Made by a program: the position numbers and the translations under genes. The notes below the pieces were generated by a model. That model ran no database searches and was not told the DNA's origin. It saw only the letters and a program-made list of their open reading frames with translations. DNA of 64,000 bases from Basidiobolus meristosporus CBS 931.73 (taxonomy: Eukaryota; Fungi; Basidiobolomycota), in contig MCFE01000150.1 of assembly GCA_002104905.1 (NCBI GenBank), positions 62,001 to 126,000 of the forward strand, in the 5' to 3' direction. The number at the start of each line of letters is the position of its first letter. The first letter of the stretch is position 1. This document shows positions 27,501 to 52,665 of the stretch, in pieces.

Positions 27501-29830
27501 CCATCCCTACCATTTCCATACCATATATGGTATCCCTATGTTACACAAGTTTTAAAGTACTGATTCCTGATCAGTTGGATGTGCTGTTCCTCTTAGAACC
27601 TTCTGGCATCTATTTAAGATACTTGTAGCTCATTATGAGGTGATGAAGATTTCTACTGATCTTTGGAGCCTTCTGGAACACCATGATTAATAATCACTTA
27701 GCCAGTGAGAAAAGTATATGAGGGAGGCAATCCCTCAGCAATAAATCATCATCTGTTTTATCAATATACTGACTTGTTGATTAGTATGATCACTGCTACC
27801 TGCAGCTACCTGAACTTCCTGCCCCCAACCACAGGACACTCCCAGGAAACTGCACTGACAGCCAACTGACCTTGGAGGCACTACTTGTGAGGAATACTCA
27901 GGGTAGGTATCTTTTATTATATCTTATTCTTTCCCAAGTTTGTTCCTGCACAGGCAAAGATATTTTTCTGTCTTTGTAACTATTGACCACAGCTGCATTC
28001 TTATCAAGTCCCTGCTAGTGGAGTTTACAGTTGTTTTGACTTTGGAAGCCTTAGTACATTGTAATCTCAAAGGATGCTGAGCCCAACACATACTTTTGTT
28101 AAGACACCAACTAAGTTGGGGATTGTAGCTTAATAGTTTTCCCTTGACAAACTTGTGGCTTTATTCCCCATCACATTAGATTAGGGATGGAATTCAAGTA
28201 CTCCTAGCAAGCTTTTGCCAGATGTTATTGCACCCAGTGAACACCCCACACATAAAACACTTGAGAAGTGTTGGATGTATATCTCCCTTGGACCTATATA
28301 CCACCACAATGCATTGGTGTTTCTTCATTTAAGTTACCAATATTGGCTTCCAGATATGAAGGACTATAAGTCAGCTTGTAAAGATTCTAATCTCTGATAC
28401 CCAGAGCAATATGGCACCATTTTAATCTGTGATCCTGCATTCAGAATTGTCAAAGTGGAAACTGAGTCCTTATGTGGTGGCCTTGCTTCCAGATAGTAGG
28501 TTCTTGGCTATTTCTGGTACAAAGAGTACTTCTTTAAAGGTCAGTGTATGGTTTCCTTCACTCTTGCTAAGGTTTACTTGGATAGTTCCTTCTGCCACTG
28601 CATCAAGTGTTCTCTTGTCACCCATGAAAACCTTCTTAATTGGAATTTCCTGATATTGAGTATAAAGTTCTTTTTGCATACAAAGTGTTGAGATGCTCCA
28701 GAGTCAATGTACCCCATCTGAGAATCCTTGTTTGTAGTTATATTTAGGTCAGATGTGAATGGTCTATCTTCAGTTGTTGCAGCCTCTCCATATTCAAGCT
28801 TTTTCTGCTGAATATATCTCTTTTTGAGGGACTGGTTGGACGTGTGTCCTTCCTTTTTCAGTATATATAAAATAGGTTGCTATTACATTTGAAAGGTCTT
28901 TGGTATCTTCTTTGTTGGTTATCATTGCTTTTTAAAGTACTTTCTTCTTCCTTCTTGTTGGTGCTTGATTTTCTTAAATCTTCATCAGGAGCCTTCCATA
29001 TACATAATTTAAGGTCATATCTTCAGTTCTGGACTATTGGGTTGCTACAAGGCCCTGAAATATGACTATCACATTATTCTGGATGGTAAATATCTCATCC
29101 TCATCAGTAGTTGATCCACCAACAGAATCCATCTCATCTGCCAGCAGGGTAGTTATACTAATATGATTTTTCATTTCTTCTCCTGGCGGCATCTTTGTAG
29201 CAAAGAATTTTCATCTTATACATTTTCTTAGCAGCTGAGCATGCCTGGTGGGTGACTTCTAGTGCCTTCCAGGCATTTTTTGCGGTTTTTGCTCTTGACC
29301 ACTGAATTAGCAATTTGCCTTTAACATTAAGGCAAATGCAGTTAGAGGCACTTTGTGCATTCCTCTGGTACTTCAAGGCTTCCTCTCCCACATTTTTAGC
29401 AGGGCATTCTTCTCCCCTGATAATATCCCAAAGGCCTCTTTCTTGTAGCAGCATCTTCATATTCACCTTCCACACTTGGTGCTTCAATCCATCTAGCTTT
29501 TCAGTAGAAGGGAAAATTCCCGTACAAGCAGTAGTAGACATTGCAGGGAGTGACAGCTTAGGGCATATAATCTGCTGTAAGAGTGTTGGAGGTATTGGAA
29601 GTGATTGGGAGGATAAGTAGATTATGTGGTTTTCACTTAATGATTTATTGAATGTAAAAGTAGTATTTATACTTTTACCTGGTCTTGGCATAGCAAACAC
29701 GTAGAATAGATTAAGGAAGGTCCTAAGAACATGTGTCCAAAGTTGAGTCTGTTTGGACAACTTTGCAAATTTTCATGTTCTGGGTACCAGGTATTTTGGT
29801 GCAAATATTCCAAGTAAATCCCAACAAGAA
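24505..29830 (-). mobile_element. Ty1/Copia F0, degenerate, both LTRs truncated
   Basis: Gag (29158-29560), integrase SDKGGEY (26693-26953), RT (24979-26016); decayed PBS GATTATATGCCC at 29561-29572; PPT and LTR start at ~24530. Confidence 0.88.
27251..28308 (+). mobile_element. Solo LTR family A (older copy)
   Basis: TGTAG...CCACA, 1058 bp, perfect 4-bp TSD ATGC. Confidence 0.92.
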
Positions 29831-29832
29831 AT

Positions 29833-32800
29833 TGTTCTAAAAATTTGTATTTCCACATGTATATTCACCTAACTTAGTCACTAAGATCATCACCTTCAAA
29901 TCCTAGAGAATACTGACTAAAGCTCCTTGTTGGGATTTACTTAGAATATTTTCACCAAAACACCAGGTACCCAGAACATGAAATTTTTCAAGTTGTCCAA
30001 ACAGCCCCAAACCTTGCACACATGTTCTTAGGAACTTCCTTAATCTATTCTACATGTTTGTTATGCCAAGACCAGGTAAAAGTATAAATATTATGTTTAC
30101 ATCCAATAAATCATTAAGTGAAACCACATAATCTACTTGTTCCCCAAATCACTTCCAATATCTCCAAAACTCTTACAGCTGGTTATGAGCCCCAAGCTGT
30201 CACTCTCTGCAATGTCTACTACTGCTATTACTGGATTTTTCCCTCTGCTGAAAAGTTGGATGGATCTAACAACCAAGTGTGGAAGGTGAAGATAAAGATG
30301 CTGCTACAAGAAAGAGGCCTTTGGGATATTTTCATGGGAGAAGAATGCCCTCCTAAAAATGTAGGAGAGGATGCCTTGAAGTACCAGATGAAAGAACAAA
30401 GTGCCTTTAACTGCATTTGCCTTAATGTTAAGGACATATTGCTAATTCAATGCTCAAGAGCAAAAATGACAAAGAATGCCTGGAAGGCATTAGAAGACAC
30501 CTTCCCATCATGTTCAGCTGCCAAGAAAATGTATCTGAGACAAAAATTCCTTACTACAAAGATGCTACCAGGAGAAGAAATGAAAAATCTAATTAACAGA
30601 ATTACCCTGCTGGTAGATGAGATGGAATCTGTGGGTGTACCAACTACTGATGAGGATGTGATAGTTACCATCCTGAATAGCCTGACAGACAAGTTTCAGG
30701 GCCTTGTATCAGCCCCAGAGTCCAGAACTGAAGATTTAACATTTAATTACATATATGGAAGGCTCCTGGATGAAGAATAAAGAGAATCAAGCGCCAATAA
30801 GAAGGAAGACAAAAATGCTTTAATAAGCAATGAAACCAGCAAAGGAGGTACCCAAGACCCTACAAAGGCAACAGCAACCTATTTTGTAACTACTGTAAAA
30901 GGAAAGGACACACATCAGACCAGTGTCTCAAAAAGAAAGATAATCAGCAAAAGAAGCCTAAATATGGAAAGGCTACAACAACTGAAGATAGACTATTCAT
31001 ATCTGCACTAAATATGACCACAAACAAGGATTCTCAGATGTGGTATATTGACTCTGGAGCATCTCAACACTTTACACACCAAAAAGAACTTTTTACCCAA
31101 TATCAAGAAATTCCAATTAAGAAGGTTTTCATGGGTAACATTAGAACACCTGATGCAGTGGGAGAAAGAACTATCCAAGTAAACCTTAGAGGCAGTGAAG
31201 GAAGCCTTACACTGACTTTCAAAGAAGTACTCTATGTATCAGAAATAGCCAAGAACCTACTCTCTGTAAGCAAGGCCACAGCAGAAGGACTCAGTTTCAG
31301 ATTTGACAATTCTGGATGCAGGATCACTGAGCAAAATGGTGCCCATATTGCTTTGGGCATCAGAGATCAGAATCTATACCAGTTGACTTATATTCCATCA
31401 TATCTGGAAGCCAATATAAGTGACTTAAATAAAGAAACACCAATGCTTTGGCATAGGATATTTGGACACATCAATTTTGATAATTTGAGTAAAATGATCA
31501 AAGATCAGCTAATTTCTGGAGTGAAAATTGATCCCCCAGCTAATATGGAGCACTGTGAAGCCTGCATATATGGTAAACAAGCCAGACAACCATTCAAGAG
31601 CTCTGGGTTAATCAAAACTAAGGAAAAATTAGATCTAATTCACTCAGATCTGTGTGGACCTATGCCAAATTTATCCTTAGGCAGGATGAAGTATTTAATC
31701 ACCTTTATTGATTATTATACAAGATACACATGAGTCTACTTCATGGAGAGAAGGCAATAAGCTCTGTCTAGGTTCAGGGAACTCAAAGCCATGGTGGAGA
31801 GAGAAACTGGTGGAAAAATCAAGAAAACACACTCTGACAATGGTAGAGAATATTCCTCAAAACTCTTCATCCACTTCTGCAAAATTCATGGGATAAAGCA
31901 AGAGACTCCTGTACCATACTCCCCACAGCAAAATGGAGTATCAAAACGTGCTAACAGAGCAATAATTCATATGGCAAGATCTATGATCCATGATAAAAAA
32001 TTATTCTATGATTTTGGGCAGAATCAGTTGCCACTGCTGTATACCGTAAAAATAGGAGTTTTAAGAGAATACTTTGTGATTCTACTCCATATGAAACATT
32101 GCATGGATACAGACTAAGTGCAGAACATCTAAGAATATTTGGGTGTACAGCATATACCAAAAAACTGGCTGGAAATCTGTCAAAATTTGAGCCAAAAAGT
32201 GTAAATGCATATTTTTGGGCTACTGCAATGAGAGTAAGGCATACAGACTCTACAATACCAAAGCAAAGAAGCTGATCAAGTCCAGGGATGTGTTGTTTGA
32301 TGAAAATTCCAAATATTCACAAAAAATGACATCAGATGATGACAAAAATTTAATCTCAAATCCACCAATTGTCAGGATAGAGTCAGAACAAAACAATGCT
32401 AATTTTTTCACTCCAGAGGACTCTGCAACTGTTGTTCAGCCAGAATCAGTGCCCAGGAATATCCCAGAAGTGCTCATTCCAGTATCAAATACCCAGAGAT
32501 CCAATTGGAGAAGAAATAGCCCAAATTATTATATCAATGAGGGTTCAAACTTAGCCTATGCCTATTCAGTCCATGTTGATGAACCCCAGACTGTAAAAGA
32601 GGCCCTAAATAGCCCTCAGACAAAGTCTTGGAGATCTGCAATGACTGAGGAATATCAGGCCCTGATGGAAAATTAAACTTGGGACTTAGTCAAATTACCA
32701 ATCAACCAAAAATCAATTGGATGCTGATGGGTCTTCAAGACCAAATACATGGCTGATGGTAAAGTTTAAAGATACAAAGCAAGGCTTGTAGCCAAAGGAT

Positions 32801-34280
32801 AGTCTCAAACAAAAGGACTTGACTATACTGAGACCTTTGCACCGGTAGCCAAGTTTAATTCCATCAGATTAATATTGGCTATTGCAGCCAAATATAAGTT
32901 TTTTATTCATTAAATGGATGTAAAATCTGTATTCTGGAATGAAGAACTTAATGAGGCCATATATATGGACCAGCCTTATGGGCTTTTTGACCAAGATAAC
33001 CCCCATTTGGTCTGCAAGCTTAAAAAGTCACTCTATGGTCTCAAACAATCACCAAGAGCCTGGAATTGCAAGATAGATTCTTATTTGGAATCTTTGAGTT
33101 TCAAAAGAAGTTATGCTGACTATAGTATATACTATAAGCCGGATAGAGCAAATCCAGTTCTACTAGCTCTATATGTGGATGATCTTATTATAGCCACCAA
33201 TAACCTAGAAACATTTGAAGAGACTAAGTCCAGCCTATCTAAGGAGTTCAAGATGTCCAATCTAGGAGAACTTAGTTACTACTTAGGGGTTAAATTCTCC
33301 ATAGACAAAAGTACCCAGACTATCACCCTAAGTCAATCCAAGTATATTCAAAATATACTAAAGAAATATAAAATGGACAACTGTAAACCAGCAGCTACCT
33401 CAATGGAGACAAACCTTAACTTAGTCAAAACTCAACCAAATCAAGCAAGCTTGGAGCCATCTGAAAGCCCTGACTTTCATTATCAATTCATGGTCAGCAG
33501 TCTGATGTATATCATGCTTGGAACACGTCCAGATATCTCATATTCAGTGGGAGTTGTCAGTCAACATAATCAGAGCTATGGATCTGATCATGTTGCAGCA
33601 GTTAAGTGGATTTTTAGATACCTAAAAGGAACTGCTGATATCTGCTTAAGATGTACCTATAAGGATGCAGAACAGGATCTTGTGGGATACTCTGATGCTG
33701 ATTAGGGACAAAATTTGGAAGACAGACAATCCACCACAGGATACACCTTTCTTTACTGTAAAGGCGCAATTTCATGGAATTCAAGAAAGCAAACAACTGT
33801 AGCACTTTCTACCACAGAGGCAGAGTAAATGGCAGCCTGTGAAGCTACAAAAGAAGCAATGTTGCTAAGAAAGCTTTTCACAGATTTAGGCCTATGTCAA
33901 AAAATGGCTATTACTTTATTTCAAGATAATCAAGGATGTATACAATTAGGTAGAAATCCAACTTTTTATGCAAGAACCAAGCACATAGATATCAGATATC
34001 ATTTCATATGTGAAGCTATAGAAAAAACTTATTTAGCTTAGTTTACTGTCCTACAGATGAAATGATTGCAGACATTTACCAAGCCATTAGCTAGAGACAA
34101 GTTTGAATATTGTAGGTCAAAATTAGGACTAGTCAGTGTTTACATTTGGCTGAGTGAGAGTGCTGTAAAAATCCAAAATTCCACTTAAATCTTCACCTAA
34201 CTTAGTCACTTAGATCATCACCTTCAAATCCTAGAGAATAATGACCAAAACTCCTTGTTGGGATTTACTTAGAATATTTT
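29833..34280 (+). mobile_element. Ty1/Copia F1; 5' LTR 29833-30180; 3' LTR is the shared split LTR (34161-34280 + 47367-47595)
   Basis: PBS GGTTATGAGCCC at 30181-30192; gag, WYIDSGAS protease, integrase, RT LYVDD and RNase H in Copia order; stops and frameshift. Confidence 0.92.
30181..30192 (+). promoter_or_regulatory. Copia PBS complementary to the initiator tRNA-Met anticodon arm (half-tRNA priming); second copy at 47596-47607
   Basis: GGTTATGAGCCC is the reverse complement of GGGCUCAUAACC in tRNA-iMet, as used by copia/Ty5-type elements. Confidence 0.85.
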
Positions 34281-35207
34281 TGTCATGATCACATGACAAC
34301 TATGAACACCCATGCCAAGTTTCAGCTTCCTAGCTCAATTTCTAAGAGATTCCTTCTGGAACCTTCTACCACCTTCCAGAAAGTTCCTGACCATTGCAAA
34401 CCATTGTTACACAATGGAACATTCCATGGAAGCTTTCCATTGTATTTTTCATAGTCCAGTACCATATATGGAAATACCAGGTCACATGACTTAGTCACAT
34501 GATCTGGTGACCCAATCCATTTCCCCCTCCTGTCTCAGTGCCGTGTCATCTATGTCATTATCCCCAGCACCATTGCTGTGCCTCACCCCACAACCCCATT
34601 AGTATTAGCTAATATCTCTTGGCATCAGTATAGCCAAAAAGTATATATAGTCCTATCCCCCCTTAAGTATTCCTCAGTCTGATAAACACAGGTCTTGAAT
34701 TAACAGCCTTGCCTTGAATCCTGTCTTGCCTTGATGGTCCACACCAAAGTCCTTTCCTGCTGTGCCTAGCTCTTCCTCCTGCCTTGTGTCTATTCATAAC
34801 AGTTTTATCAGACTCTCCTGACTTACCTGTGGATCCCTGCCTTCTGCCCAAAGTTTGAAGAAAACTTGTAAAAGGAATACTCACCGTAAGTATCACCCAT
34901 CATCTTTCTCTAGTCTTGTCCTATAAAGGCAAAGATACTTTATCTTTGTAAAACTATTGGTCAAAGCTGCATTCACTTTATTACCCTGCTGGTGGAGTTT
35001 ACAGTTGTTACAGTATTGGAAGCTTTAGTACAATACTCTATCAAAGGATGTTGAAACCAGTACCTTCTGAAGCAATGCTAACTTATTTAAGTTGGGGATT
35101 GTGGCTCCATAGTTGTATTCTTGACATACTAGTGGCTTTACAAACCCACAATCTAGTTTAGTATATTCCAGTATTCCTTGCAAGTTCATCCGCCTTCCTC
35201 AGCTACC

Positions 35208-36140
35208 ATGTCCAACCTAGCGCTGAACTTTGCCCAGCTCATGGCTGCCTTTACCCAACTGCAGCAAGACCATGCAGACCTCAGAAGCACTCTTGCTCAG
35301 TTCCAGAACCAAAGTGTCCAACAAACTAGCCATGTCCCAGTCTACCAAGAACCCAAGTATACTCCTGCTACCAAGTTCAATGGCTCTCAGAATGAATTCT
35401 GTGGCTTCATCAACATGGTGAAGAACAATCTTGCACTCCAGCCCAACCAGTACCCCACTGACCAGGCCAAAGTTGGTTTCATCTCCAACCTGCTTACTGG
35501 TACAGCTCTCAAGTGGTTCTCCCCATTAGTGGAGACCAACTCTCCCCTCCTCAGAGACTACCAAGCTTTTCTCACTGAAATGGAGCTAACATTTGGTAAC
35601 CTTGACCAAGCCAGAACTGCTGCCAACAAGATCAAGACCCTCAAACAAGGGAACAAACCAGCATCAGTCTATGCCTCTGAATTCTGACAACTCTCCAGTG
35701 ACCTCAGCTCCTGGGGTCAAGCAGCCTTGATAAGCCAATTCCAAGATGGCCTTAATGATGAAGTTTGTGATCTGCTACTCACACTCCCAGATCCAGATAC
35801 ATTGGTTGAAGCTATGCACCAAGCAATCCGGTGTGATAACAGACTATTCCAGAAGAAGCAAAAGAACCGTCAAAGACACATTCCTGTTGCAGTCCCAGCC
35901 CCTCCTGCTCCCCAAGTCACTCCAGAAGATCCTATGCAGATTGATAGTGCCAAATACAAGAAACTATCAAAGAGTGAAAAGTCCAGACGTCAACAAGCCA
36001 GCCTCTGTCTATACTGTGGCCAACCAGGTCACTTTGCCAAGTCCTGCCCCAACAAGAAGTCCAGCTTCAAGCTGATGCAGTCCTCCAGCAACCAACCTGA
36101 TTCAGATCTGCTGGGAAACTCCAATGTCCAGTTGCACTGA
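35208..36140 (+). pseudogene. Gag of Gypsy B (one in-frame stop at 35685)
   Basis: Retrotrans_gag-like core and CCHC knuckle; CGA>TGA-type stop. Confidence 0.85.
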
Positions 36141-36157
36141 CAGGCTTGCAACTGGAC
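36113..36157 (+). promoter_or_regulatory. -1 ribosomal frameshift signal of Gypsy B
   Basis: G GGA AAC slippery heptamer in the gag frame, 6-nt spacer, perfect 11-bp stem (36126-36136 / 36147-36157); pol is open in the -1 frame. Confidence 0.85.
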
Positions 36158-39100
36158 CCACCCATGAAAATCCAGCATATCCAAGAATCTTCCTTTGCCA
36201 CAAAATCTATCCAGTCCTTGAGAGTGCCTGTCAAAATCCAGATCCCTGACTCCAGTCCTGTCCCAGCCCTAGCCCTGATTGATTCTGGTGCTTCATCCTG
36301 TTTCATTGACCAAGCCTTTGTCCAGAAGCACTCTATTCCTGTTACCTTGAAATCCTGTCCAGTCCAAGTAGAAGTTATTGATGGAAGATCACTCTCCTCT
36401 GGTGCCGTTACCCATGAAACATGCTTACTCCAGCTGTCCAGTACTGCCCACCAAGAAAGAATCGCCTTCAACATCATCAACTCACCACACTATCCTATTG
36501 TGCTTGGAAGCTCATGGTTGAGCTACCACAATCCAAGTATTGATTGGAAATCCAAGATCCTGTCATTCACCAGATCCCACCAAGTCAACTCCATGAAATC
36601 TCCAGACCCTGATAACCATGAAAAGTAGGTTGCCAATAGTTGAACAGCCCAAGATACCTTGCCAGCTGAAGGAGCCCCCTCAGCAACTATACCAGCCAAG
36701 TATCAAGAGTTTGCCCATGTCTTTGACAAGAAGAAAGCAGAACTCCTCCCTGACCATTGGCCTTATGACTGCCCTATTGACCTTGAAGATGGAAAAGTCC
36801 CTCTATTTGGCCCAATATATAACCTTGCCCAGCCGGAGTTGCAAGAACTCTATGGTTATATTCAAGAGAACCTCCAGAAGGGTTTTATTCAGCACTCCAA
36901 ATCACCTGCTGGAGCCCCAATCCTCTTTGTCAAGAAGAAGGATGGCACCCTCAGAATGTGTGTGAACTACTGTGCTTTGAATATGATTACAGTCAAGAAC
37001 CGCTACCCCCTGCCCCTGATCAACACACTGTTGGATCAGCTATCTGCTGCCCAAGTCTTCACCAAGATAGACTTGAGAGGAGCTTACAATCTTGTCAGAA
37101 TCAAGCCTGGTGATGAATGGAAAACTGCCTTTTGCACAAGATATGGTCACTTTGAGTACAAAGTAATGCCATTTGGCCTCACCAATGCCCCTGCTGTGTT
37201 TCAACACCTCATGAATGACATATTCCATGAATACCTTGACCAGTTTGTGGTAATCTACCTTGATGATATTCTCATAGACTCCAAGAGCCAAGATGAACAT
37301 GATGAACATGTCAAGAAAGTATTGAGAAAACAAGACTCTGCCGGTCTCTATGCCAAGCTAGAGAAGTGTGAATTTGACCAGAGAGAAGTGGAATTTCTTG
37401 GTTACCTCATCAGCCCTGAGGGAACAAGAATTGACCCAAAGAAAGTTGACTCAGTCCAATCCTGGAAAACTCCAAGCTCAGTCAAGGAAGTACAATCCTT
37501 CCTGGGATTTGCCAACTTCTATTGCAGGTTCATAGCCAACTACTCCAAGATAGTCACCCCTCTGACAAAGCTTACCCAGAAGAATACACCTTTTGCCTGG
37601 AATGAGGAGCAATCCACCTCATTCAACCAACTCAAGAAATCTTTCCTGAAGGCCCCCCTGCTTGCCCACCCTGACCTTGAGAAGCAATTCATAGTGGAGA
37701 CTGATGCTTCTGATTTTGCCCTTGGTGCCATACTCTCCCAGTATGATGAGGACAATGTGTTGCACCCCATTGCATTCTACTCTCGGAAGTTTTCCCCTGC
37801 AGAGATCAACTATGATATCTATGATAAGGAGTTGCGTGCCATCATTGTAGCCTATGAGCAATAGAGACACTACCTGGATGGTGCAAAACACAAAATCCTA
37901 GTCTTCTGTGACCATAAGAACCTTGAGTACTTTGCAACTTCCAAAGTACTAAACCGGAGACAAGCTAGATGGTCACTCTTCCTGTCCAGCTTTGACTTTA
38001 CTATCATCTATAGACCTGGTGCAAAGCAAGGAAAGCCTGATGCCCTGTCCAGAAAAAAGGAATATGCCCTGGAAGAGGGAGATGATGCCTGTAGGCAAAT
38101 GGAACACCCATTGCTGAGCAAGAAACATTTTGAGATTCTTGCCACCCAGTCCTCAAGTCTTGTCATCCCTTCATTCCTAGTAGGGATATCAGAATCCCAA
38201 GCCTCTGATATGACTTCCAGCACCGTCAAGAAATATCTGGAATCCCCAGTTGGGCCCCCTCCCAAGTTCCCAAACATTCAGAACCTGCATTTGGTTAACA
38301 ACCTCATCTACCACAAGCAGCAGCTTTATGTCCCAGACCTTGCCACCCAGCTAGACATCATTAAGTCTTGGCATGATTCAATGGCAGCAGGCCACTTTGG
38401 TACTGCCAAAACCTTGAATGCTATCAAAAGAGATTTCTGGTGGCCTAGAATGATAACTCTTATCAAAGAGTACATTCTGACTTGTGATATTTGCAACCGT
38501 GCAAAACCAGCCAGACACCAGCCCTATGGACTTCTTCAGCCCTTGCCCATCCCCAAACACCAATGGAGATCTATATCTATGGACTTCATTACTGACCTCC
38601 CTGAGTCATGTGGCTTCAATGCTATACTTGTAGTGGCTGACTAGGTGACCAAGATGGCTCACTTTATCCCTTACTGTAAGAACACTGATGCAAAAGAAAC
38701 TGCTGCATTAGTCCTGAAGAATATTTTCCGCCTTCATGGTATCCCCAGTGATATTGTGTCAGATAGAGGCCCACAGTTTGTGTCCAAGTTTTGGAAACAC
38801 TTCATGCAATACCTTGGTGTTCAAGTCAAGCTCTCTACTGCCTTCCATCCACAGTCTGATGGCCAGACTGAAGGAATCAACCAGATTCTAGAGCAATACC
38901 TCCGGTGCTATATCAATTACCAGCAATACAATTGGGTTGATCTACTCCCTGTTGCTGAGTTTGCCTACAACAACTCAAGCCATAGTGCAACCGGTTTTAC
39001 ACCATTCTATGCAAACTATGGATTCCACCCTCAGTTTGATATCCAGATTCCAACAAACCCAATGAGCCCACATGCAGCTGAACATGCCAAAGCAATCCAG

Positions 39101-40319
39101 GACATCCAGAACACCCTCAAGGAAGAGCTATCCTTAGCTCAGGAAAGCTACAAGAAATTTGCCAATCTAAAACGGCATCCCAGCCCTGATCTTAATGAAG
39201 GAGATTCTGTATGGTTGCTCAGAAGAAACATCAGCACCAACCGCTGTAGTGGGGTGACAGTGACCCCCACTGACAGATGTGCTCATTCCCCTATTTTCTA
39301 CTTCCCAATATCTCTACTACACTTATTTTAGTTTTATCCCATTTGTCTTACCCAATCAGTACTATCCCATAAGCTGGTTGCCTATCACACCTGCTTACCT
39401 TATTGCATAAGTTACCCCTTACTTAATGTAAGATTACTAGCTACTAGTGCTTCTATATTAGGCAAGTACCCGCACCAGTACCCGTGTCACATGATCAACC
39501 CGTGTCACCATCCCTACCATTTCCATACCATATATGGTATCCCCATGTTACACAGGTTTCAGAATACTGATTCCTGATTGGTTGGATGTGCTGTGCCTCT
39601 TAGAACCTTCCGGCACCTACTTAGAACATTCTTAGGTCATTCTGATGTCATTAAGATTTCTATTGATATCCGGAACCTTCTGGAACACCATGATTAGTAA
39701 TCACTTAGCCAGTAAGAAAAGTATATAAAGGAGGCTCTCCCTCAACAATAAATCATCATCCCTTTTATCAATATACGAACTTGTTGATTAGTGTGATCAC
39801 TGCTACCTGCTGCTACCTGAACTTCCAACCCTAGACCACAGGACACTCCCAGGAAACCGCGCTGACAGCCAACTGACCTTGGAGGCACTACTTGTGAGGA
39901 ATACTCAGAGTAGGTATCTTTTATTATATTTGATTCTTTCCCAAGTTTGTTCTTGTACAGGCAAAGATATTTTTCTATCTTTATAACTATTGACCACAGC
40001 TGCATTCCTATCAAGTCCCTGCTGGTGGAGTTTACAGTTGTTTTGACTTTGGAAGCTTTAGTACATTGACATCTCAAAGGACGCTGAACCCAGCACATAC
40101 TTTTGTTAAGACGCCAACTAAGTTGGGGATTGTAGCTCAATAGTTTTCCCTTGACAAGCTTGTGGCTTTATTCCCCTTCACATTAGATTAGAGACAGAAC
40201 CCAAGTATTCCTAGCAAGCTTTTGCCAGAGGTTATTGCACCCAGTGAACACCCCACACACAAAACACTTGAGAAGTGTTGGACGTATCTCTCCCTTGGAC
40301 TTATACACCACCACATATT

Positions 40320-40337
40320 TGGCACCCAACGTGGGGG
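40320..40337 (+). promoter_or_regulatory. tRNA-Lys(CUU)-type primer binding site
   Basis: TGGCACCCAACGTGGGGG versus canonical Lys1,2 PBS TGGCGCCCAACGTGGGGC (16/18). Confidence 0.85.
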
Positions 40338-40455
40338 GTTCATACAAGCTCCCTAGGACCCAACAAGATTTACCTGAAGATTTGAGCTGTTATCCACCTA
40401 TTGAAAAGAGACTACCGATATTACCAAGATTACAACACCAACCTACCTGGCCAAA

Positions 40456-43400
40456 ATGAACTCTATGCCATTACCACTCTCACATGGAGCCCCACAGTTT
40501 GATGGAAAGAATGTGGAAAGCTTCATATTCAAATGGGAGAAGCTCTGCAAGATGTGCAGCCTATCTGAACAAGAAATGGCTGAAGACTTCCCCTACTACT
40601 GCACCGATGATATTACCACTAAGCTTCTCAGACAAGGAGACATTCTCACTGACTGGGCCTTAATGAAGACCTACCTACAGACCAAGTATGGTAGACCCCA
40701 GATATACTATGGAATTGAAGACCTCAGGCACTTTGGAAGAACTGGACTTTCCAAGCTACCACTTGAAGAGTTCATTCAACAGTGTGACAATATGGCCAAG
40801 CCACTCCTAGAGTCCCAGGCTATAACTGAGTTTACCATGACACTTTACCTTGCACAAGGGCTTCCCCAGGACTTGGCAAGGAAAGATGACTTACATGCAG
40901 CCAAGGATGACAAGTCTGGCATTCCTTGCTTTGCAGAGATGAAACGTGTTCTCCTAGAGGCAAAGCAAACTTCTACCTTTATGAGACTCCTGACATCTAA
41001 TGTGCCAGACCAGTCAACCAAGGAGCCAAGGAGTGCTGCTGCTGACAATCAGACCTACACTACCAACAGAATTGACCAACTTGCTGAAGAGCTACAAAAG
41101 CTAGCCCTCAAGATTAATGGCTCAGCCGAGGTTGCCACTGATGGACAAAGACCTTTGCCCAGGCACTGCATCTGGTGTGACTCTACTCAGCATGCCAGAC
41201 AAGAATGCTCAGAGCTTAGTCAGCTACTCAGAGAAGGAGCAGTACAGTTTGATGCTGATGGAATGCTTGCTGACAAGGAAGGAAGAAGGATTCCCACTAA
41301 TTTCCAAAGAGGAGGGATGAGAGCCCTTTTCCAGAAATCTGACTCAGCAACCAGAAAGATTACTTTTGATGCCCCTATTGGGACTCATAAAGTGAATCCA
41401 AGCAGCCCTGACAACAGACAACATGAAGTTGATGCCTTTGCTACCAAAAGACACCTTGCTGAAGAACCTGCCAAGCCCATCCTTAGAAGACCACGCTTTG
41501 AAGAACCTGAAGTTGTTATTGACAAGAGGCCTAGTATGCTGCCCACCCAAGATCCATTGCCTCACTTTCAGATGACCTCAAAGATAGCAAGCTACTCAAG
41601 CCCTCAACTGATTACTGAGAAGCTGCTGAAGCAGAACCTCACTTTGTCGGTTGGAGAAATCATGAGTGTATCCCCATCTGTTAGGAAGACCTTTGATGAG
41701 CAGCTTAGAACAAGACAACAAGCTGTTGAACATATGGACACTCATATAATTCAGACAAACCATGAAGACCACCAAAAGGATGACAACACTACTGAATATA
41801 AGACCTTTAACTCAGTTGTAAATGCTGTGGTGAAAGGGTATATATATGATGACCCTGTTGACTGCCATATTGACAGTGGCTCAGAGATTTGTGTTATGCC
41901 GCTAGACTTCTGGAAGACACTTAAAAGCAAGGAGCTACTGCCTGTTGATAGAGATATTGGATGGAACATGACCGATGCAAACTCAGGATCTAGTCCACTC
42001 TATGGTGTAGTACACAAGTTTCCTATTGAGGTACAAGGAATCAAGGTCTGGCTTCCCCTCTTCATCTGCCAGAAGGCAAACTTTGACCTTCTGCTAGGTA
42101 GACCATGGGAAGCCAGTACTAAGGCTACAACTACCAACTATTCCAATGGGTCAGTATGGTACACCATACAAGGATCCAACCCAGGACTACAGTCAACCTT
42201 CTGTGGTGTAACACCCAACAATAAGAGGACACATACTGCCTGCCAGAAGACACATCTTGTTATGGAAGAAGATGAAGAGCCTCACAATATACACCCCAAC
42301 ATTTGGAGCTGCTCATTAGGTATACAGGAGCAGACTGCTATGGTTCGGACAAAATACAAGACAGTAGAACAGATGATTAGACCATCACTTACACCTTTGA
42401 CTGATGGATCCCGACCTGCTGATTACATTAGACCACCAGAAGAAACACCAGATGATACACAACTTACACCTGAGAGACTTAAGCAACTTATCATTGGTGA
42501 TGGAAACCTTACACCAGAGGAGATACTATTATTTAAGGAGACCTTGAAAAGGCATGATAAGGTCTTCTCATATAATGACAAGGAGATGGGACTCTTAAAG
42601 ACATCAGTTGAAAAACCCATCAAGATTCATACAGTGCCCCACACACCCTGGTCATTTAAGCCTTACCCACTGCCCAGAGGACTCCAAGCTGATGTGCATG
42701 ACCTACTTAAGAAGAAGATAGAAGCTGGTATCCTAGAACCTTGCCATGGACCCTATGCTAACAGATGGTTTGTGACCAAAAAGAAGAATGGAAAGCTCCA
42801 ATTCATTCAAGACATGCAACCTGCAAATGCTGTCACTATCAGAGATGCTGCTATACCTCCATCTATTGATGACTTTGCAGAAAGCTTTAGTGGCCACTCC
42901 ATCTACTCAACATACGATCTCTACTCAGGATATGACCAGATTCCCCTTGATGAGACATCAAGAGATATGTTTGCGCTACAGACACCATTTGGACTATTAA
43001 GGATGACAAGACTCAGCCAAGGGGCTACAAACTCCGTGGCTCAGTTCCAGAGATGCATGGTGAATGTGCTATACCAGTTTATACTTGAGAAACTTGCTGT
43101 CTTTGTTGATGACATAGGCATCAAAAGACCAAAAACCCGGGACACCACTGGAGTCATGCCTGGAGTCAGAAAGTTTGTCTATGATCATATTTCAGACAAT
43201 GATGCCATATTAGGAGCCATTGAAGAAGCTGGACTCACCATCAGTGGTGAGAAAAGCAGCTTTGGTGTATCAGAGATATCCATTGTTGGACAAAAATGCA
43301 ATACCTTTGGTCGCTCACCTGGCAATTCCAAGACACAAAAGATATGCAACTGGCCTACCCCCACAAATCTAACACAAGCTCGTGGCTTTGTGGCAGCTTG

Positions 43401-45309
43401 TGGGTTCTTTAGGATCTGGATCCCAAGATTTTCTGAGATAGCAGAACCAATCTACCGACTACCGAGAAAGAATACCCCATTTATCTGGGGAGAAGAGCAA
43501 GAAGAAGCCATGCAATTACTGAAAGAGGCCTTAGTATCTCCACCAGTTCTAAGACCTCTTGACTATCAAAACACTGAATGCCCACCTATTTTGACAGTGG
43601 ATGCAAGCCCTATAGGAGCTGGAGCACTACTTGGACAAGATGATGAAGATGGCAATTGCTATGCCTGCAGATATGAGAGCTGCCTATTCTCTCTTAGAGA
43701 GCAAAGATACTCACAGATTAAAAGAGAACTACTAGGAGTTGTGAAGATGCTGAGGAAGCTGAAGTCACAACTCTACATGACACATTTTATCCTGGAGACA
43801 GATGCCAAGCCACTTATAGGAATGATCAACAAGCCTGACCTACCTGATGATGCCACAAACCAATGGATGGCATGGCTGAAAATGTTTGACTTTGAGGTCA
43901 GACATATCCCTGGCAAGACAAATGTTGTGGCTGATGCACTCTCCCGGAAGGGACCACAATTATTTGAAGACTTGGACCCTCACTTTGATGATATTATTGA
44001 TGCAGAGATCCGACGAATTGCCATCAAAGACCAAGAGAGAACTACCTGGAGTCTGATCAAGGAATATCTAAGGACTCTTAAAGAACCTAGTTGGATGGAA
44101 ATTCAGGAGTTTAGAAAACTCAGGAAGAAGGCACATCACTACTATCTTAAAGATGATCTTCTCTTTAAGCGAGTGAAGCCTGGACTTATGCCAAGAAGAG
44201 TAGTCACTACCCCTCAAGAGCAACTGAACATCATGACAAGTATCCACCAAGGAGAACCAGGAGGACATAGAGGACGAGAAGCCACCTACTATACCACAGC
44301 TCAGAGGTACTACTGGGAAAACATGTACTATGATATTCAACACTTTGTTGAGTCATGTGTAGCCTGCCAGAAGAGATCCTCCAAGTGTTATGAAGAACCA
44401 CTGCATCCTACTTACACAATCTGTTTATGGCAAAAGGTTGGTATTGACCTTGTCCACATGCCAACAGCTGGATCAAAAAAGTACCTGATTGTTGCTAGAG
44501 ATGACCTTAGTGGATGGGCAGAGGCTCAAGCCTTGCCCAACAACAAGAGCCATACCATATGGAGATTTATACTTGAAGACATCATCTGCAGATTTGGCTG
44601 CATCCAACAGTTTGTTGCTGACAGAGGAGAGATGACATCCCAAATGATCCAGGAGTTGTGCTCAAAGTACAAGATACACATTGCTTTTACAACCGCTTAC
44701 CACCCTCAAGCCAATGGAATGATAGAGAGAGGACATGGACCATTGGTGAACTCTCTTGTCAAGGCCTGTGAGAATAACACAACACTGTGGCCACAGCAAT
44801 TACATCTTGCACTCTGGGCAGATAGAATTACTACCAAGAGAACAACTGGATTATCACCATTCAAACTACTCTATGGACATGACTGCACACTACCAGTTGA
44901 GTTAAACACAGTCACTTGGAACTCATTGAATTGGAGATCCAATATGCAGACTGAAGACCTCCTTGCAACTTGCATACAGCAACTTGATCACCATGACTTG
45001 AATATCAGCAGAGCTGCTGAACAACTTAAGGATACACAACTAAAGAACAAGATGCCCTTTGACAAATCACACCCAACAAGACCAAAACCACTATCACTAG
45101 GAGACCCAGTATTACTCTATGATTCTACCTTGGACAAGCAATGGAGTCGGAAGTTTGACAACAAATGGACTGGCCCCTACCTCATTTCCAAAGTGATTGG
45201 AAATGGAAGTTATTACATATCTGAGCTTGACAACACCCAGTTGAGAGCACCAGTTGCTGGATATCGACTTAAGTTATTCAAGCATAGGAATTTTGCACAT
45301 GAAGATTAG
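40456..45309 (+). CDS. Uninterrupted Gag-Pol polyprotein of Gypsy A (1617 aa)
   Basis: Knuckle CIWCDSTQHARQEC; protease DSGSEI; RT FVDD; RNase H TVDAS; integrase H-H-C-C, GIDLV, YHPQANG; no chromodomain. Confidence 0.93.
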   Translation: MNSMPLPLSHGAPQFDGKNVESFIFKWEKLCKMCSLSEQEMAEDFPYYCTDDITTKLLRQGDILTDWALMKTYLQTKYGRPQIYYGIEDLRHFGRTGLSKLPLEEFIQQCDNMAKPLLESQAITEFTMTLYLAQGLPQDLARKDDLHAAKDDKSGIPCFAEMKRVLLEAKQTSTFMRLLTSNVPDQSTKEPRSAAADNQTYTTNRIDQLAEELQKLALKINGSAEVATDGQRPLPRHCIWCDSTQHARQECSELSQLLREGAVQFDADGMLADKEGRRIPTNFQRGGMRALFQKSDSATRKITFDAPIGTHKVNPSSPDNRQHEVDAFATKRHLAEEPAKPILRRPRFEEPEVVIDKRPSMLPTQDPLPHFQMTSKIASYSSPQLITEKLLKQNLTLSVGEIMSVSPSVRKTFDEQLRTRQQAVEHMDTHIIQTNHEDHQKDDNTTEYKTFNSVVNAVVKGYIYDDPVDCHIDSGSEICVMPLDFWKTLKSKELLPVDRDIGWNMTDANSGSSPLYGVVHKFPIEVQGIKVWLPLFICQKANFDLLLGRPWEASTKATTTNYSNGSVWYTIQGSNPGLQSTFCGVTPNNKRTHTACQKTHLVMEEDEEPHNIHPNIWSCSLGIQEQTAMVRTKYKTVEQMIRPSLTPLTDGSRPADYIRPPEETPDDTQLTPERLKQLIIGDGNLTPEEILLFKETLKRHDKVFSYNDKEMGLLKTSVEKPIKIHTVPHTPWSFKPYPLPRGLQADVHDLLKKKIEAGILEPCHGPYANRWFVTKKKNGKLQFIQDMQPANAVTIRDAAIPPSIDDFAESFSGHSIYSTYDLYSGYDQIPLDETSRDMFALQTPFGLLRMTRLSQGATNSVAQFQRCMVNVLYQFILEKLAVFVDDIGIKRPKTRDTTGVMPGVRKFVYDHISDNDAILGAIEEAGLTISGEKSSFGVSEISIVGQKCNTFGRSPGNSKTQKICNWPTPTNLTQARGFVAACGFFRIWIPRFSEIAEPIYRLPRKNTPFIWGEEQEEAMQLLKEALVSPPVLRPLDYQNTECPPILTVDASPIGAGALLGQDDEDGNCYACRYESCLFSLREQRYSQIKRELLGVVKMLRKLKSQLYMTHFILETDAKPLIGMINKPDLPDDATNQWMAWLKMFDFEVRHIPGKTNVVADALSRKGPQLFEDLDPHFDDIIDAEIRRIAIKDQERTTWSLIKEYLRTLKEPSWMEIQEFRKLRKKAHHYYLKDDLLFKRVKPGLMPRRVVTTPQEQLNIMTSIHQGEPGGHRGREATYYTTAQRYYWENMYYDIQHFVESCVACQKRSSKCYEEPLHPTYTICLWQKVGIDLVHMPTAGSKKYLIVARDDLSGWAEAQALPNNKSHTIWRFILEDIICRFGCIQQFVADRGEMTSQMIQELCSKYKIHIAFTTAYHPQANGMIERGHGPLVNSLVKACENNTTLWPQQLHLALWADRITTKRTTGLSPFKLLYGHDCTLPVELNTVTWNSLNWRSNMQTEDLLATCIQQLDHHDLNISRAAEQLKDTQLKNKMPFDKSHPTRPKPLSLGDPVLLYDSTLDKQWSRKFDNKWTGPYLISKVIGNGSYYISELDNTQLRAPVAGYRLKLFKHRNFAHED

Positions 45310-47366
45310 TTTGCTTTGACCCAAGTTCAAAGCTGAGAGGGGGGTGGATGTAGTGGGGTGACAGTGACACCCACTGACAGATGTGCTCATTCCCCTATTT
45401 TCTACTTCCCTATATCTCTACTACACTTGTTTTAGTTTTATCCCATTTGTCTTACCCAATCAGTACTATCCCATAAGCTGGTTGCCTATCACACCTGCTT
45501 ACCTTATTGCATAAGTTACCCCTCACTTTATGTAAGATTACTAGCTACAAGTGCTTCTATATTAGGCAAGTACCCGCGCCAGTACCCGTGACACATAATC
45601 AGCCCGTGTCACCATCCCTACCATTTCCATACCATATATGGTATCCCCATGTTACACAGGTTTCAGAATACTGATTCCTGATTGGTTGGATGTGCTGTGC
45701 CTCTTAGAACCTTCCGGCACCTACTTAGAACATTCTTAGGTCATTCTGATGTCATTAAGATTTCTATTGATATCCGGAACCTTCTGGAACACCATGATTA
45801 GTAATCACTTAGCCAGTAAGAAAAGTATATAAGGGAGGCTCTCCCTCAACAATAAATCATCATCCCTTTTATCAATATACGAACTTGTTGATTAGTGTGA
45901 TCACTACTACCTGCTGCTACCTGAACTTCCAACCCTAGACCACAGGACACTCCCAGGAAACCGCGCTGACAGCCAACTGACCTTGGAGGCACTACTTGTG
46001 AGGAATACTCAGAGTAGGTATCTTTTATTATATTTGATTCTTTCCCAAGTTTGTTCTTGTACAGGCAAAGATATTTTTCTATCTTTATAACTATTGACCA
46101 CAGCTGCATTCCTATCAAGTCCCTGCTGGTGGAGTTTACAGTTGTTTTGACTTTGGAAGCTTTAGTACATTGACATCTCAAAGGACGCTGAACCCAGCAC
46201 ATACTTTTGTTAAGACGCCAACTAAGTTGGGGATTGTAGCTCAATAGTTTTCCCTTGACAAGCTTGTGGCTTTATTCCCCTTCACATTAGATTAGAGACA
46301 GAACCCAAGTATTCCTAGCAAGCTTTTGCCAGAGGTTATTGCACCCAGTGAACACCCCACACACAAAACACTTGAGAAGTGTTGGACGTATCTCTCCCTT
46401 GGACTTATACACCACCACACCGCCCTTGTGACAAGTTGGATTTCAAGAAACTTGGTCCCTTCAAGATCAAGATGAAGCTTAGCCCTATAGTATATCAGCT
46501 ACAGTTACCAGCAAGTATGAAAATCCATGATACTTTCCATGTGTCCCTCCTGGAGCCATATTGTAGGAACACCTTGCCAAACTGGCAAGAAGCAAAGCCC
46601 CAAGCCATCCAGGTTGACCAACATCAAGAATTTGAAGTTAAACAGATTCTAGACTCCAAGTATATCCTGTCAAAGCTGTACTACTTAGTAGACTGGATTG
46701 GTTACAACCCAAGTGACCAAACATGGGAACCAGCTACCCATCTCACTAATTGTCAAGAACTAGTTACCCAGTTCCACCAACAATATCCTGCAAAACCTGC
46801 CCCAAAGGGAAACAGAGCTTTGCCTGGAAGTGGAGAATAGTGTCATGATCACATGACAACTATGAACACCCATGCCAAGTTTCAGCTTCCTAGCTCAATT
46901 TCTAAGAGATTCCTTCTGGAACCTTCTACCACCTTCCAGAAAGTTCCTGACCATTCCAAACCATCGTTACACAATGGAACATTCCATGGAAGCTTTCCAT
47001 TGTATTTTTCATAGTCCAGTACCATATATGGAAATACCAGGTCACATGACTTAGTCACATGATCTGGTGACCCAGTCCATTTCCCCATCCTGTCTCAGTG
47101 CCGTGTCATCTATGTCATTATCCCCAGCACCATTGCTGTGCCTCACCCCACAACCCCATTAGTATTAGCTAATATCTCTTGGCATCAGTATAGCCAAAAA
47201 GTATATATAGTCCTATCCCCCCTTAAGTATTCCTCAGTCTGATAAACACAGGTCTTGAATAAACAGCCTTGCCTTGAATCCTGTCTTGCCTTGATGGTCC
47301 ACACCTAAGTCCTTTCCTGCTGTGCCTAGCTCTTCCTCCTGCCTTGTGTCTATTCATAACAATTTT

Positions 47367-52353: not shown

Positions 52354-52665
52354 TGTTGTAAGAGTTTTGTAAGATATGTGGCTTCACTTATTGACTTATC
52401 AGGTATGAAAATGGTATTCATACTTTGACAAGGTTGTGGCAACATACCCCCACAAAATCTGTTCAGGAAGGTCCCAAGAATACATGAGCAAAGTCTATAA
52501 GCCCTTGGGCAACTAGGGGATTCTAGTGTTCTGGGTACATAGCATCTTAGTGAGAACATCCCTGGTAAATCCCCACAAAGAATTTTGTCTTGGGAAAGCT
52601 CATAAACCAAGATCCAAGTAGTCAAGTGGAGGTAAATATTAGGTGTAATTCCGAAATTTCCAACG
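52354..52665 (-). mobile_element. Diverged solo LTR related to Copia F
   Basis: Both ends align to the reverse complement of the F LTR termini; no TSD found. Confidence 0.65.

What the first reader, a model, noticed from the sequence alone, without database searches (positions are those of the whole stretch)
34874..35184. Conserved structured-RNA module shared by two unrelated Gypsy lineages (leader of B, LTR of A)
B 34874-35184 (after the PBS, ending ~25 nt before the gag ATG) aligns to A-LTR 39898-40218, 46002-46322 and 27891-28211, while the LTRs and proteins of A and B are otherwise unalike. Invariant blocks (CCCTGCTGGTGGAGTTTACAGTTGTT, TTGGAAGCTTTAGTACA, TAAGTTGGGGATTGT, GTGGCTTTA) alternate with variable spacers of mostly conserved length. 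Nested pairings in A: AACTATTGA 39985 / TCAATAGTT 40137; GCTGCATTCC 39999 / GGATTGTAGC 40127; TGCTGG 40020 / CCAGCA 40090; hairpin CCAAC-TAA-GTTGG 40114-40126. B keeps each of these, mostly through G-U or compensatory changes (CCAGTA, GTGGCT, CTAACTT-ATTT-AAGTTGG). In both elements the module should lie in the 5' leader of the genomic RNA. Inference: a leader RNA element exchanged between families (packaging/dimerisation signal, IRES or an unrecognised ribozyme). I recognise no known RNA family.
Basis: partly seen in the sequence, partly recalled or inferred. Interest (0 to 1): 0.85.

Follow-up and report, generated by a model that had tools for sequence, protein, structure and literature searches.

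The report
Shared helix-closed leader domain of retrotransposons
Two unrelated jumping-gene families in this fungus carry the same roughly 330-base stretch at the start of their transcripts; parts of it are clearly under selection, so it probably has a function, but its detailed RNA fold and its job are still unproven.

Summary
B 34874-35184 aligns with A-LTR 39898-40218, 46002-46322 and 27891-28211 at about 70-76% identity. A and B otherwise share 24% RT identity and no detectable Gag similarity. B is a self-priming Tf1-like chromovirus; A is tRNA-primed.

New here:
- Conservation is blocky (runs test P<=1e-4). Three other LTR segments shared between families are not blocky.
- Homology stops at the outer edge of a 17-19 bp inverted-repeat closing helix (P about 0.001).
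- A's 763-nt leader, module included, has no ATG (10 expected), so the module sits in a scanned, unspliced 5'UTR.

- Only one compensatory pair was found.
- Single-sequence fold z-scores are -0.6 and -0.9; the alignment z-score is -2.2 to -2.6.
- The P1/P2 helices are predicted in A but not in B.

The module starts with GTAAGT/GTAGGT and ends near YAG, but A's lack of ATGs and the internal constraint argue against a constitutive intron. There is no Rfam match, and no RNA runs were on record.

Best reading: a cis-acting leader RNA domain passed between lineages by recombination, probably read by host machinery.

The scan noted this module in at least ten other windows of the same Basidiobolus genome, and two follow-ups reached similar verdicts.

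The parts
34863..35186 (+). Module copy in the leader of element B, downstream of the PBS, ending 21 nt before the gag ATG at 35208.
   Evidence: Alignment; closing-helix ends.
39884..40226 (+). Module copy in U5 of the 5' LTR of element A. The core is 39898-40218; homology with B runs 39890-40220.
45988..46330 (+). Module copy in the 3' LTR of element A, identical to the 5' LTR copy.
27877..28219 (+). Module copy in an older solo A-type LTR (27251-28308, TSD ATGC), 7.8% diverged from A1.
34872..34881 (+). 5' strand of the closing helix in B. It pairs with 35170-35179, and an outer extension 34863-34868 pairs with 35181-35186.
   Evidence: 10-nt perfect complement, P<0.0002, duplex -19.5 kcal/mol. 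Pairing probability about 1.0.
39897..39905 (+). 5' strand of the closing helix in A. It pairs with 40204-40212, with extensions 39890-39895/40214-40220 and 39884-39887/40223-40226.
   Evidence: 9-nt perfect complement, P=0.0014, duplex -23.2 kcal/mol. Pairing probability about 1.0.
34886..34891 (+). 5'-splice-site-like hexamer GTAAGT in B. Its counterpart GTAGGT lies at 39910-39915 in A.
   Evidence: It is the only GTRNGT in each copy and sits 4 nt after the closing-helix strand.
39693..40455 (+). ATG-free zone of element A, 763 nt, running from just upstream of the TATA box to the gag-pol start codon and including the module.
   Evidence: 0 ATG against a mean of 10.1 in 5000 dinucleotide shuffles. 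The module alone gives P=0.011.
34281..34801 (+). 5' LTR of B, with the TATA box at 34642. The 3' LTR is 46841-47361 and the TSD is ATTTT.
34804..34814 (+). Self-priming PBS of B, complementary to 34676-34686, which lies 34 nt after the TATA box and is the inferred 5' end of the RNA.
   Evidence: The chromodomain plus Tf2-1 SH3 domain fits the Tf1/Sushi group.
39245..40315 (+). 5' LTR of A, with TATA at 39722 and AATAAA at 39747. The 3' LTR is 45349-46419 and the TSD is CCGC.
40320..40336 (+). tRNA-type PBS of A (starts TGG, 4 nt after the LTR).
   Evidence: No self-complement of 8 nt or more is found in the LTR.
40456..45309 (+). Intact gag-pol ORF of A, 1617 aa, with DUF4100, one CCHC knuckle, RT, RNase H and IN.

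Best explanation
The module is a discrete, helix-closed domain of about 325-340 nt in the 5' untranslated leader of the full-length, unspliced RNA of two unrelated Ty3/Gypsy lineages. It moved between lineages by recombination as a unit bounded by its own closing helix. In A it landed in U5, upstream of the PBS. In B it sits downstream of the PBS. About eleven sequence blocks of 7-26 nt have since been held by purifying selection in both lineages. The two elements share neither Gag, nor priming mechanism, nor LTR, so the domain most likely acts in cis through host machinery on the full-length transcript (stability, nuclear export or translation of an intronless or unspliced RNA). Recognition by a lineage-specific Gag is less likely. 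Shown: the homology, its sharp helix-bounded edges, the block-wise constraint, the leader position, and the lack of ATGs in A. Inferred: the RNA-level mode of action, the dependence on host factors, and recombination as the route of transfer.
For: Homology is confined to the module, while RT is 24% identical and Gag shows no similarity. B is self-priming and Tf1-like; A is tRNA-primed. Mismatches are clustered (P=0.00015 and 0.0001). Three other LTR segments shared between families, used as controls, are not clustered (P 0.09-0.75). A1-versus-A3 changes avoid the columns that are conserved between A and B (8/219 versus 12/89, P=0.0035). GC content is equal in conserved and variable columns. 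The closing helix has a 9-10 nt perfect complement extended to 17-19 bp (P=0.0014 and <0.0002) and pairing probability about 1 in A1, A3 and B. The 5' hairpin is predicted in all copies (0.7-0.99). The alignment-level folding z-score is -2.2 to -2.6. Pairs in A's own fold fall in conserved columns (Fisher P=7e-4). A's 763-nt leader has no ATG. No reading frame is conserved. In a second species the R/U5 plus module part is abundant but U3 is not, and contigs carry the module in other contexts with break points near its edges. A precedent exists for a host-dependent RNA element acquired by recombination between retroviral lineages (PMC11379458).
Against: Single-sequence folding energies are ordinary (z -0.64 and -0.93). 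Helices of 9-10 bp are common in shuffled sequences. Only one compensatory pair was found, and there is no compensation signal. The interior helices are predicted in A but not in B. The column-shuffle z-score is modest and does not preserve dinucleotide content. B's copy carries two in-frame ATGs, forming a 38-codon uORF. There are no RNA data and only two independent lineages in the window. The function is untested.
Confidence: 0.5

Rival explanations
1. The module is a packaging or dimerisation signal of the genomic RNA, recognised by the CCHC nucleocapsid. Sharing it lets one family ride in the other's particles, or it simply works for both.
For: It lies in the leader between the TSS and gag in both elements. 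Both Gags carry one CCHC knuckle. It is a helix-closed domain with conserved blocks. Co-packaging would also explain transfer by template switching.
Against: The Gag proteins have no detectable similarity, and the priming systems differ, so one shared specific signal is less expected. No conserved palindromic loop is present: the AAGCTT in one block is broken in A3. There are no binding data.
Confidence: 0.2
2. The module is a spliceosomal leader intron, possibly captured, that is removed from the mRNA. The closing helix brings the splice sites together.
For: A single GTRNGT sits at the 5' edge of every copy (GTAAGT at 34886, GTAGGT at 39910 and 27903). YAG lies at the 3' edge (35171 in B, 40214 in A). 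The helix strands bracket these sites. B's module holds a uORF that splicing would remove. Other readers independently called the module intron-like.
Against: A's module is ATG-free, like the rest of its scanned leader (P=0.011), so it is present in the translated RNA. Invariant internal blocks of up to 26 nt are not expected in an intron. There is no CTRAY branch motif in A, and the only one in B lies more than 80 nt from the 3' end. The 3' site would be buried in a perfect 9-bp helix. Among the joints that were listed, no contig joint removes GT..AG (203 joints were not shown). A conserved GTRNGT this close to the edge has roughly a 0.05 chance of arising at random.
Confidence: 0.13
3. The module is a MITE-like or foldback DNA element with terminal inverted repeats that inserted independently into both retroelements and is now carried along, perhaps co-opted.
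For: It has 17-19 bp imperfect terminal inverted repeats, and homology ends at their outer edge. The termini ACTTG...CAAG(T) faintly recall the AGACTTG termini noted for a DNA transposon family nearby (note s1-222244).
Against: No target-site duplication of 2-9 bp flanks either copy. There are no copies outside A-LTRs and the B leader in 64 kb. Both copies are sense-oriented in a 5'UTR. Block-wise constraint and the lack of ATGs indicate function in the retroelement RNA.
Confidence: 0.08
4. The module is a DNA-level regulatory element, such as a downstream enhancer, an internal promoter or an antisense promoter, made of transcription-factor sites.
For: The pattern is short invariant blocks separated by variable spacers. 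Its position is just downstream of the TSS in both elements.
Against: Spacer lengths are almost fixed over 300 nt (16 gap columns). The ends form a long complementary helix. The shared U3 (promoter) segments used as controls do not show this block pattern.
Confidence: 0.07

Closest known systems
Constitutive transport elements of simple retroviruses and endogenous retroviruses (MPMV CTE; the HML-8-derived CTE acquired by SERV-K/MER11, PMC11379458; conserved machinery, PMC4338338)
   Same: These are cis-acting, orientation-dependent, structured RNA elements of a few hundred nt. They work through host factors, so they are portable. One documented case was acquired by recombination between retroviral lineages.
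   Different: Known CTEs lie near the 3' end and have twofold-symmetric internal loops that bind NXF1. This module lies in the 5' leader, matches no Rfam model, and has no tested export activity. The host is a fungus.
5' post-transcriptional control elements and packaging or dimerisation leaders of retroviruses and Ty elements (my own knowledge, not tested here)
   Same: They are located in R/U5 or the leader between the TSS and gag. The leader is long, ATG-free and scanned. The sequence is highly conserved, possibly because segments serve alternative pairings.
   Different: Those elements are lineage-specific and co-evolve with their own Gag or RT. Here the same sequence serves two lineages with unrelated Gag and different priming, and it sits on opposite sides of the PBS.
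Captured cellular modules in LTRs, such as the 5S-rRNA-derived module of Cassandra TRIMs (my own knowledge)
   Same: A discrete conserved RNA-like module is embedded in an LTR and is kept in all copies.
   Different: No cellular source was found for this module (Rfam and tRNA scans negative). It is also present outside the LTR in the second lineage.
Tf1/Sushi self-priming chromoviruses (PMC6317226)
   Same: Element B has the chromodomain plus Tf2-1 SH3 integrase tail and an 11-nt PBS complementary to the inferred 5' end of its own RNA.
   Different: This describes the carrier element, not the module. No such shared leader domain is described for Tf1.

Membership tests
Any Rfam 15 family (including self-cleaving ribozymes, snoRNAs, snRNAs, CTE-like and IRES models) | A covariance-model match at or near the gathering score | tested here: not met
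   There are no gathering-level hits in the whole window. With E<=10 over both copies, only chance-level hits appear at 15.9-17.8 bits, against cut-offs of 37.5-60.
Spliceosomal intron | A 5' GTRNGT and a 3' YAG at the ends | tested here: met
   GTAAGT at 34886 and GTAGGT at 39910 and 27903. CAG ends at 35171 and TAG ends at 40214. This is weakly specific, with a chance probability of roughly 0.05.
Spliceosomal intron | A branch-point motif CTRAY 10-40 nt upstream of the 3' site | tested here: not met
   A1 and A3 have none. The only one in B, at 35078, lies more than 80 nt upstream of the 3' end. A conserved CTTGACA block is a weaker candidate.
Spliceosomal intron | Removal from the mature RNA | not testable with these tools
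   No RNA run is on record. Indirect evidence against constitutive removal in A is that the module is ATG-free like the rest of the scanned leader.
MITE / TIR DNA transposon | Terminal inverted repeats | tested here: met
   A 9-10 nt perfect repeat, 17-19 bp imperfect.
MITE / TIR DNA transposon | A target-site duplication flanking the TIRs | tested here: not met
   No direct repeat of 2-9 bp lies outside the inverted repeats in A or B.
MITE / TIR DNA transposon | Standalone copies outside other elements | tested here: inconclusive
   None in this 64-kb window. The rest of the genome could not be searched. Contigs carrying the module in other contexts exist.
Structured cis-acting leader RNA of retroelements | Location in the transcribed leader between the TSS and gag, in sense orientation | tested here: met
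   In B the TSS is about 34676, inferred from the TATA box plus self-primer. In A the TATA box is at 39722 and the ATG-free zone runs to gag. The TSS positions are inferred, not measured.
Structured cis-acting leader RNA of retroelements | Secondary structure conserved with covariation | tested here: inconclusive
   The closing helix and the 5' hairpin are shared and robust. Alignment z-score is -2.2 to -2.6. However, there is only 1 compensatory pair, no compensation signal, and the interior helices are predicted only in A.
Structured cis-acting leader RNA of retroelements | Purifying selection on the element | tested here: met
   Block-wise conservation is absent from control segments. Changes within family A avoid the conserved columns.
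IRES | Cap- and scanning-independent initiation | not testable with these tools
   Indirectly disfavoured: all three parts of A's leader are ATG-depleted, as expected for linear scanning.

The most novel reading that the evidence does not exclude
The module is an undescribed portable RNA domain of a fungus. It is a self-contained, helix-closed leader element that plugs retroelement transcripts into a host pathway, for example export, stabilisation or translation of intronless or unspliced RNA, perhaps involving its U1-type GTAAGT motif. Unrelated retrotransposon lineages trade it by recombination. This would make it a 5'-leader analogue of the retroviral CTE/PCE in an early-diverging fungus.
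Probability: 0.3. Interest if true: 0.75.

Novelty: new variant of a known kind. Interest (0 to 1): 0.55.

Why it matters
If the domain works through host factors, it would be a compact handle on how early-diverging fungi treat intronless or unspliced retroelement RNA. It would also be a clear case of cis-acting RNA modules, rather than genes, being the unit exchanged between transposon lineages. It further provides a ready-made natural experiment: the same domain sits in U5 of a tRNA-primed element and after the PBS of a self-priming element. Position-independent function can therefore be tested directly.

Tried and rejected
**Collecting more copies for covariation failed**
- Protein searches with A gag (as part of the polyprotein and alone), A pol and B gag found no relative closer than 50% identity.
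- The exact-protein look-up found nothing.
- Two block patterns in metagenome contigs and one in viral contigs gave 0 hits.
- nhmmer at maximum sensitivity found no further copy in the window. The only near-hit is a borderline 56-nt match at 52422-52477 (E=0.017), which lacks all other blocks.

**RNA evidence**
- No RNA run holds the stretch.
- Laying DNA contigs from three organisms showed no clean GT..AG deletion among the listed joints, but 203 joints were not shown.

**Other ideas tested and dropped**
- Coding: stops occur in all six frames.
- Complementarity of the blocks to a shared tRNA primer: rejected, because B self-primes and A uses a tRNA.
- Long-range pairing of the blocks with other parts of either RNA: nothing consistent.
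- Unusual single helices: 9-10 bp helices are ordinary in shuffled sequences.
- Shunt-type uORF before the helix: there is no upstream ATG.
- GC bias as the cause of the link between paired and conserved positions: rejected.

**Steps not taken or not applicable**
- I did not type the 324-column structure into the count of structure pairs. The equivalent controls were scripted instead.

Full report
**Context**

The window is a nest of LTR retrotransposons.

- Element A runs 39245-46419, with 1071-bp LTRs that are 98.9% identical, a 4-bp TSD (CCGC) and an intact 1617-aa gag-pol ORF at 40456-45309.
- A is inserted in element B, which runs 34281-47361, with 521-bp LTRs and a 5-bp TSD (ATTTT).
- B in turn interrupts a tandem Copia-like element (29948-34280 is about 95% identical to 47362-51697).
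- An older solo A-type LTR lies at 27251-28308, with TSD ATGC.

These points rest.

A carries DUF4100, RT, RNase H and IN domains. B carries a Ty3-type capsid, protease, RT, IN and a C-terminal Tf2-1 SH3 domain plus chromodomain. Earlier notes of this scan name the genome as a Basidiobolus fungus. I could not verify that directly. A's best protein relatives are at most 50% identical and come from early-diverging fungi and plants.

**Checking the observation**

Outside this module, self-BLAST finds no similarity between A and B. Their RT/RNase H regions are 24% identical, and their Gag proteins give no alignment at all. The module, by contrast, is 69-76% identical at the nucleotide level, depending on the span aligned. 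It must therefore have been transferred between the lineages long after they diverged.

**Where the module sits**

- B has an 11-nt sequence directly after its LTR (34804-34814) that is perfectly complementary to 34676-34686, which lies 34 nt downstream of a TATA box at 34642.
- This is the signature of the self-priming Tf1/Sushi group (PMC6317226). It also places B's RNA 5' end at about 34676.
- The module therefore starts about 199 nt into B's RNA, after the PBS, and ends 21-24 nt before the gag ATG at 35208.
- A has an ordinary tRNA-type PBS at 40320-40336, a TATA box at 39722 and an AATAAA at 39747.
- From 39693 to the gag-pol ATG at 40456, a span of 763 nt, there is not a single ATG. About 10 are expected, and none of 5000 dinucleotide shuffles had as few.
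- Each of the three parts of that leader is individually depleted, and the module alone gives P=0.011.

I read this as follows. Transcription of A starts just after the TATA box. The module lies in U5, once per RNA. Ribosomes scan through it to reach gag. The module thus lies in the 5' leader of both elements but on opposite sides of the PBS.

**Is it constrained?**

Mismatches between A and B are strongly clustered: 50 match runs, P=0.00015, with a longest run of 26. On the extended alignment the sum-of-squares test gives P=0.0001.

Three other segments of the A LTR that are shared with other LTR families in this window at 74-88% identity serve as controls. None shows significant clustering (P 0.09-0.75).

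An independent comparison within family A gives the same picture. A1-versus-A3 changes fall preferentially in the columns that also differ between A and B (12/89 versus 8/219, P=0.0035). GC content is the same in conserved and variable columns. No reading frame is open across the module.

The module is therefore not neutral captured DNA. About eleven blocks of 7-26 nt are held in both lineages. Within family A the whole transcribed R/U5 is more conserved than U3 (6-9% versus 13-14% divergence). By that measure the module does not stand out from its U5 neighbours.

**Edges**

- In B, 34872-34881 pairs with 35170-35179, and 34863-34868 pairs with 35181-35186.
- In A, 39897-39905 pairs with 40204-40212, with outer extensions.

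A perfect complement of 9-10 nt between the two 30-nt ends has P=0.0014 (A) and P<0.0002 (B). The full helix is 17-19 bp, at -23.2 and -19.5 kcal/mol. Its pairing probability is about 1.0 in A1, A3 and B.

Contigs from the same and a related species carry the module in further contexts, with break points near these edges. One contig diverges at 40222, and others start aligning at about 39866 and 39902. The unit that was exchanged is therefore bounded by its own closing helix.

**Interior structure**

- Single-sequence folding energies are ordinary (z -0.64 and -0.93).
- Contiguous helices of 9-10 bp are typical of shuffled sequences.
- RNAalifold finds 84 pairs but only one with a two-sided change.
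- A column-shuffle test of the consensus energy gives z=-2.2 for three sequences and z=-2.6 for A1 plus B. This is suggestive but not strong, and the shuffle does not preserve dinucleotides.
- Pairs in A's own fold lie preferentially in conserved columns (Fisher P=7e-4).
- More of A's pairs survive in B than under position-randomised nulls (P=0.003 or less).
- When the changed columns are held fixed and only the new base is randomised, there is no excess (P=0.23 for the MFE fold, 0.07 for the centroid). B's own fold shows no such association.
- The features that are robustly shared are the closing helix, a 5' hairpin (probability 0.7-0.99 in all copies) and the sequence blocks.
- Indels fall in predicted loops.

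With only two independent lineages in the window, covariation cannot be decided here.

**Intron-like signals**

Every copy begins, 4 nt after the helix strand, with the only GTRNGT in the module (GTAAGT in B, GTAGGT in A). Every copy also ends near a YAG. Other first readers also called it intron-like.

Several points argue against a constitutive intron:

- The module in A is ATG-free, like the rest of the scanned leader.
- The invariant internal blocks are not expected in an intron.
- A lacks a CTRAY motif.
- The 3' site would be buried in a perfect 9-bp helix.

B's copy does contain two in-frame ATGs, forming a 38-codon uORF, so splicing in B cannot be excluded. The GTAAGT may instead act as a U1-binding site without splicing; this is inference only. 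No RNA run was available, and the listed contig joints show no GT..AG deletion form, though the list was truncated.

**Other rivals**

- A MITE-like insertion would explain the inverted termini and the sharp edges. However, there is no target-site duplication and no standalone copy in 64 kb. Both copies are sense-oriented in a 5'UTR, and the interior is constrained.
- A DNA-level enhancer does not explain the near-fixed spacing or the terminal complementarity.
- No Rfam family matches, ribozymes and snoRNAs included, and no tRNA-like gene is present.

**Mechanism**

The two carriers share neither Gag, nor priming mechanism, nor LTR. I therefore favour a cis-acting RNA domain that is read by host machinery acting on the unspliced full-length transcript, affecting its export, stability or translation. 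A shared packaging or dimerisation signal is the main alternative.

Transfer of a host-dependent RNA element between retroviral lineages by recombination has a documented precedent (PMC11379458). The need for retroelements to export unspliced RNA is well established (PMC10309623 and PMC4338338).

**Standing**

The scan has noted this module in at least ten other windows of the same genome. Two earlier follow-ups concluded it is a shared structured leader RNA.

My tests agree that it is a real, shared and constrained leader element. They add the closing helix, the ATG-free leader, the self-priming versus tRNA-priming contrast and the block-pattern controls. In this window they do not reproduce support from matching mutations for the interior fold.

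Noticed in passing
window 34642-34814: Element B is a self-priming, Tf1-like chromovirus. An 11-nt PBS at 34804-34814 is complementary to 34676-34686, which lies 34 nt after a TATA box. This pins the RNA 5' end without any RNA data.
   Followed up: yes
window 29948-51924: The insertions are nested three deep. A sits inside B, and B sits exactly at the internal/LTR junction of a tandem LTR-internal-LTR-internal Copia-like array (29948-34280 is about 95% identical to 47362-51697). Each insertion has a clean TSD (CCGC, ATTTT). An inverted third copy of the same Copia-like element (24511-29828) is split by the solo A-type LTR (TSD ATGC).
   Followed up: partly
window 39245-40315 versus 45349-46419: The 12 differences between A's two LTRs are not spread evenly. 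Eleven lie in U3 (513 nt), one lies just before the module, and none lies in the last 418 nt. The binomial P is about 0.002. This is unexplained; possible causes are a mutational hotspot, gene conversion, or a replication-derived heteroduplex.
   Followed up: no
window 39245-39757; 226-533(-), 2242-2371, 9918-10101, 21226-21386(-): A's U3 is itself a mosaic. 39453-39757 is shared at 76-79% with another LTR family in the window, and 39245-39374 is shared at 88% with a fragment at 2242-2371. Exchange of LTR segments between families is therefore common here. Unlike the module, these segments show no block-wise conservation.
   Followed up: partly
window 52422-52477: A borderline nhmmer match (E=0.017) to the 3' part of the module includes a 15/17 match to the CTTGACAAGCTTGTGGC block. 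No other block is nearby, so it is probably chance.
   Followed up: partly
window 39722-40312 (contigs of run X5, organism B): A related species holds the R/U5 plus module part of the A LTR abundantly at 13-18% divergence. It holds little of the U3 or of the B-type leader module, although B-type LTR sequence is abundant there.
   Followed up: partly
window 35048-35161: B's module contains a 38-codon uORF with two in-frame ATGs that ends about 45 nt before the gag ATG. It is absent from A1. The first ATG corresponds to ACG in A1 and ATG in A3, a CpG-type transition.
   Followed up: no
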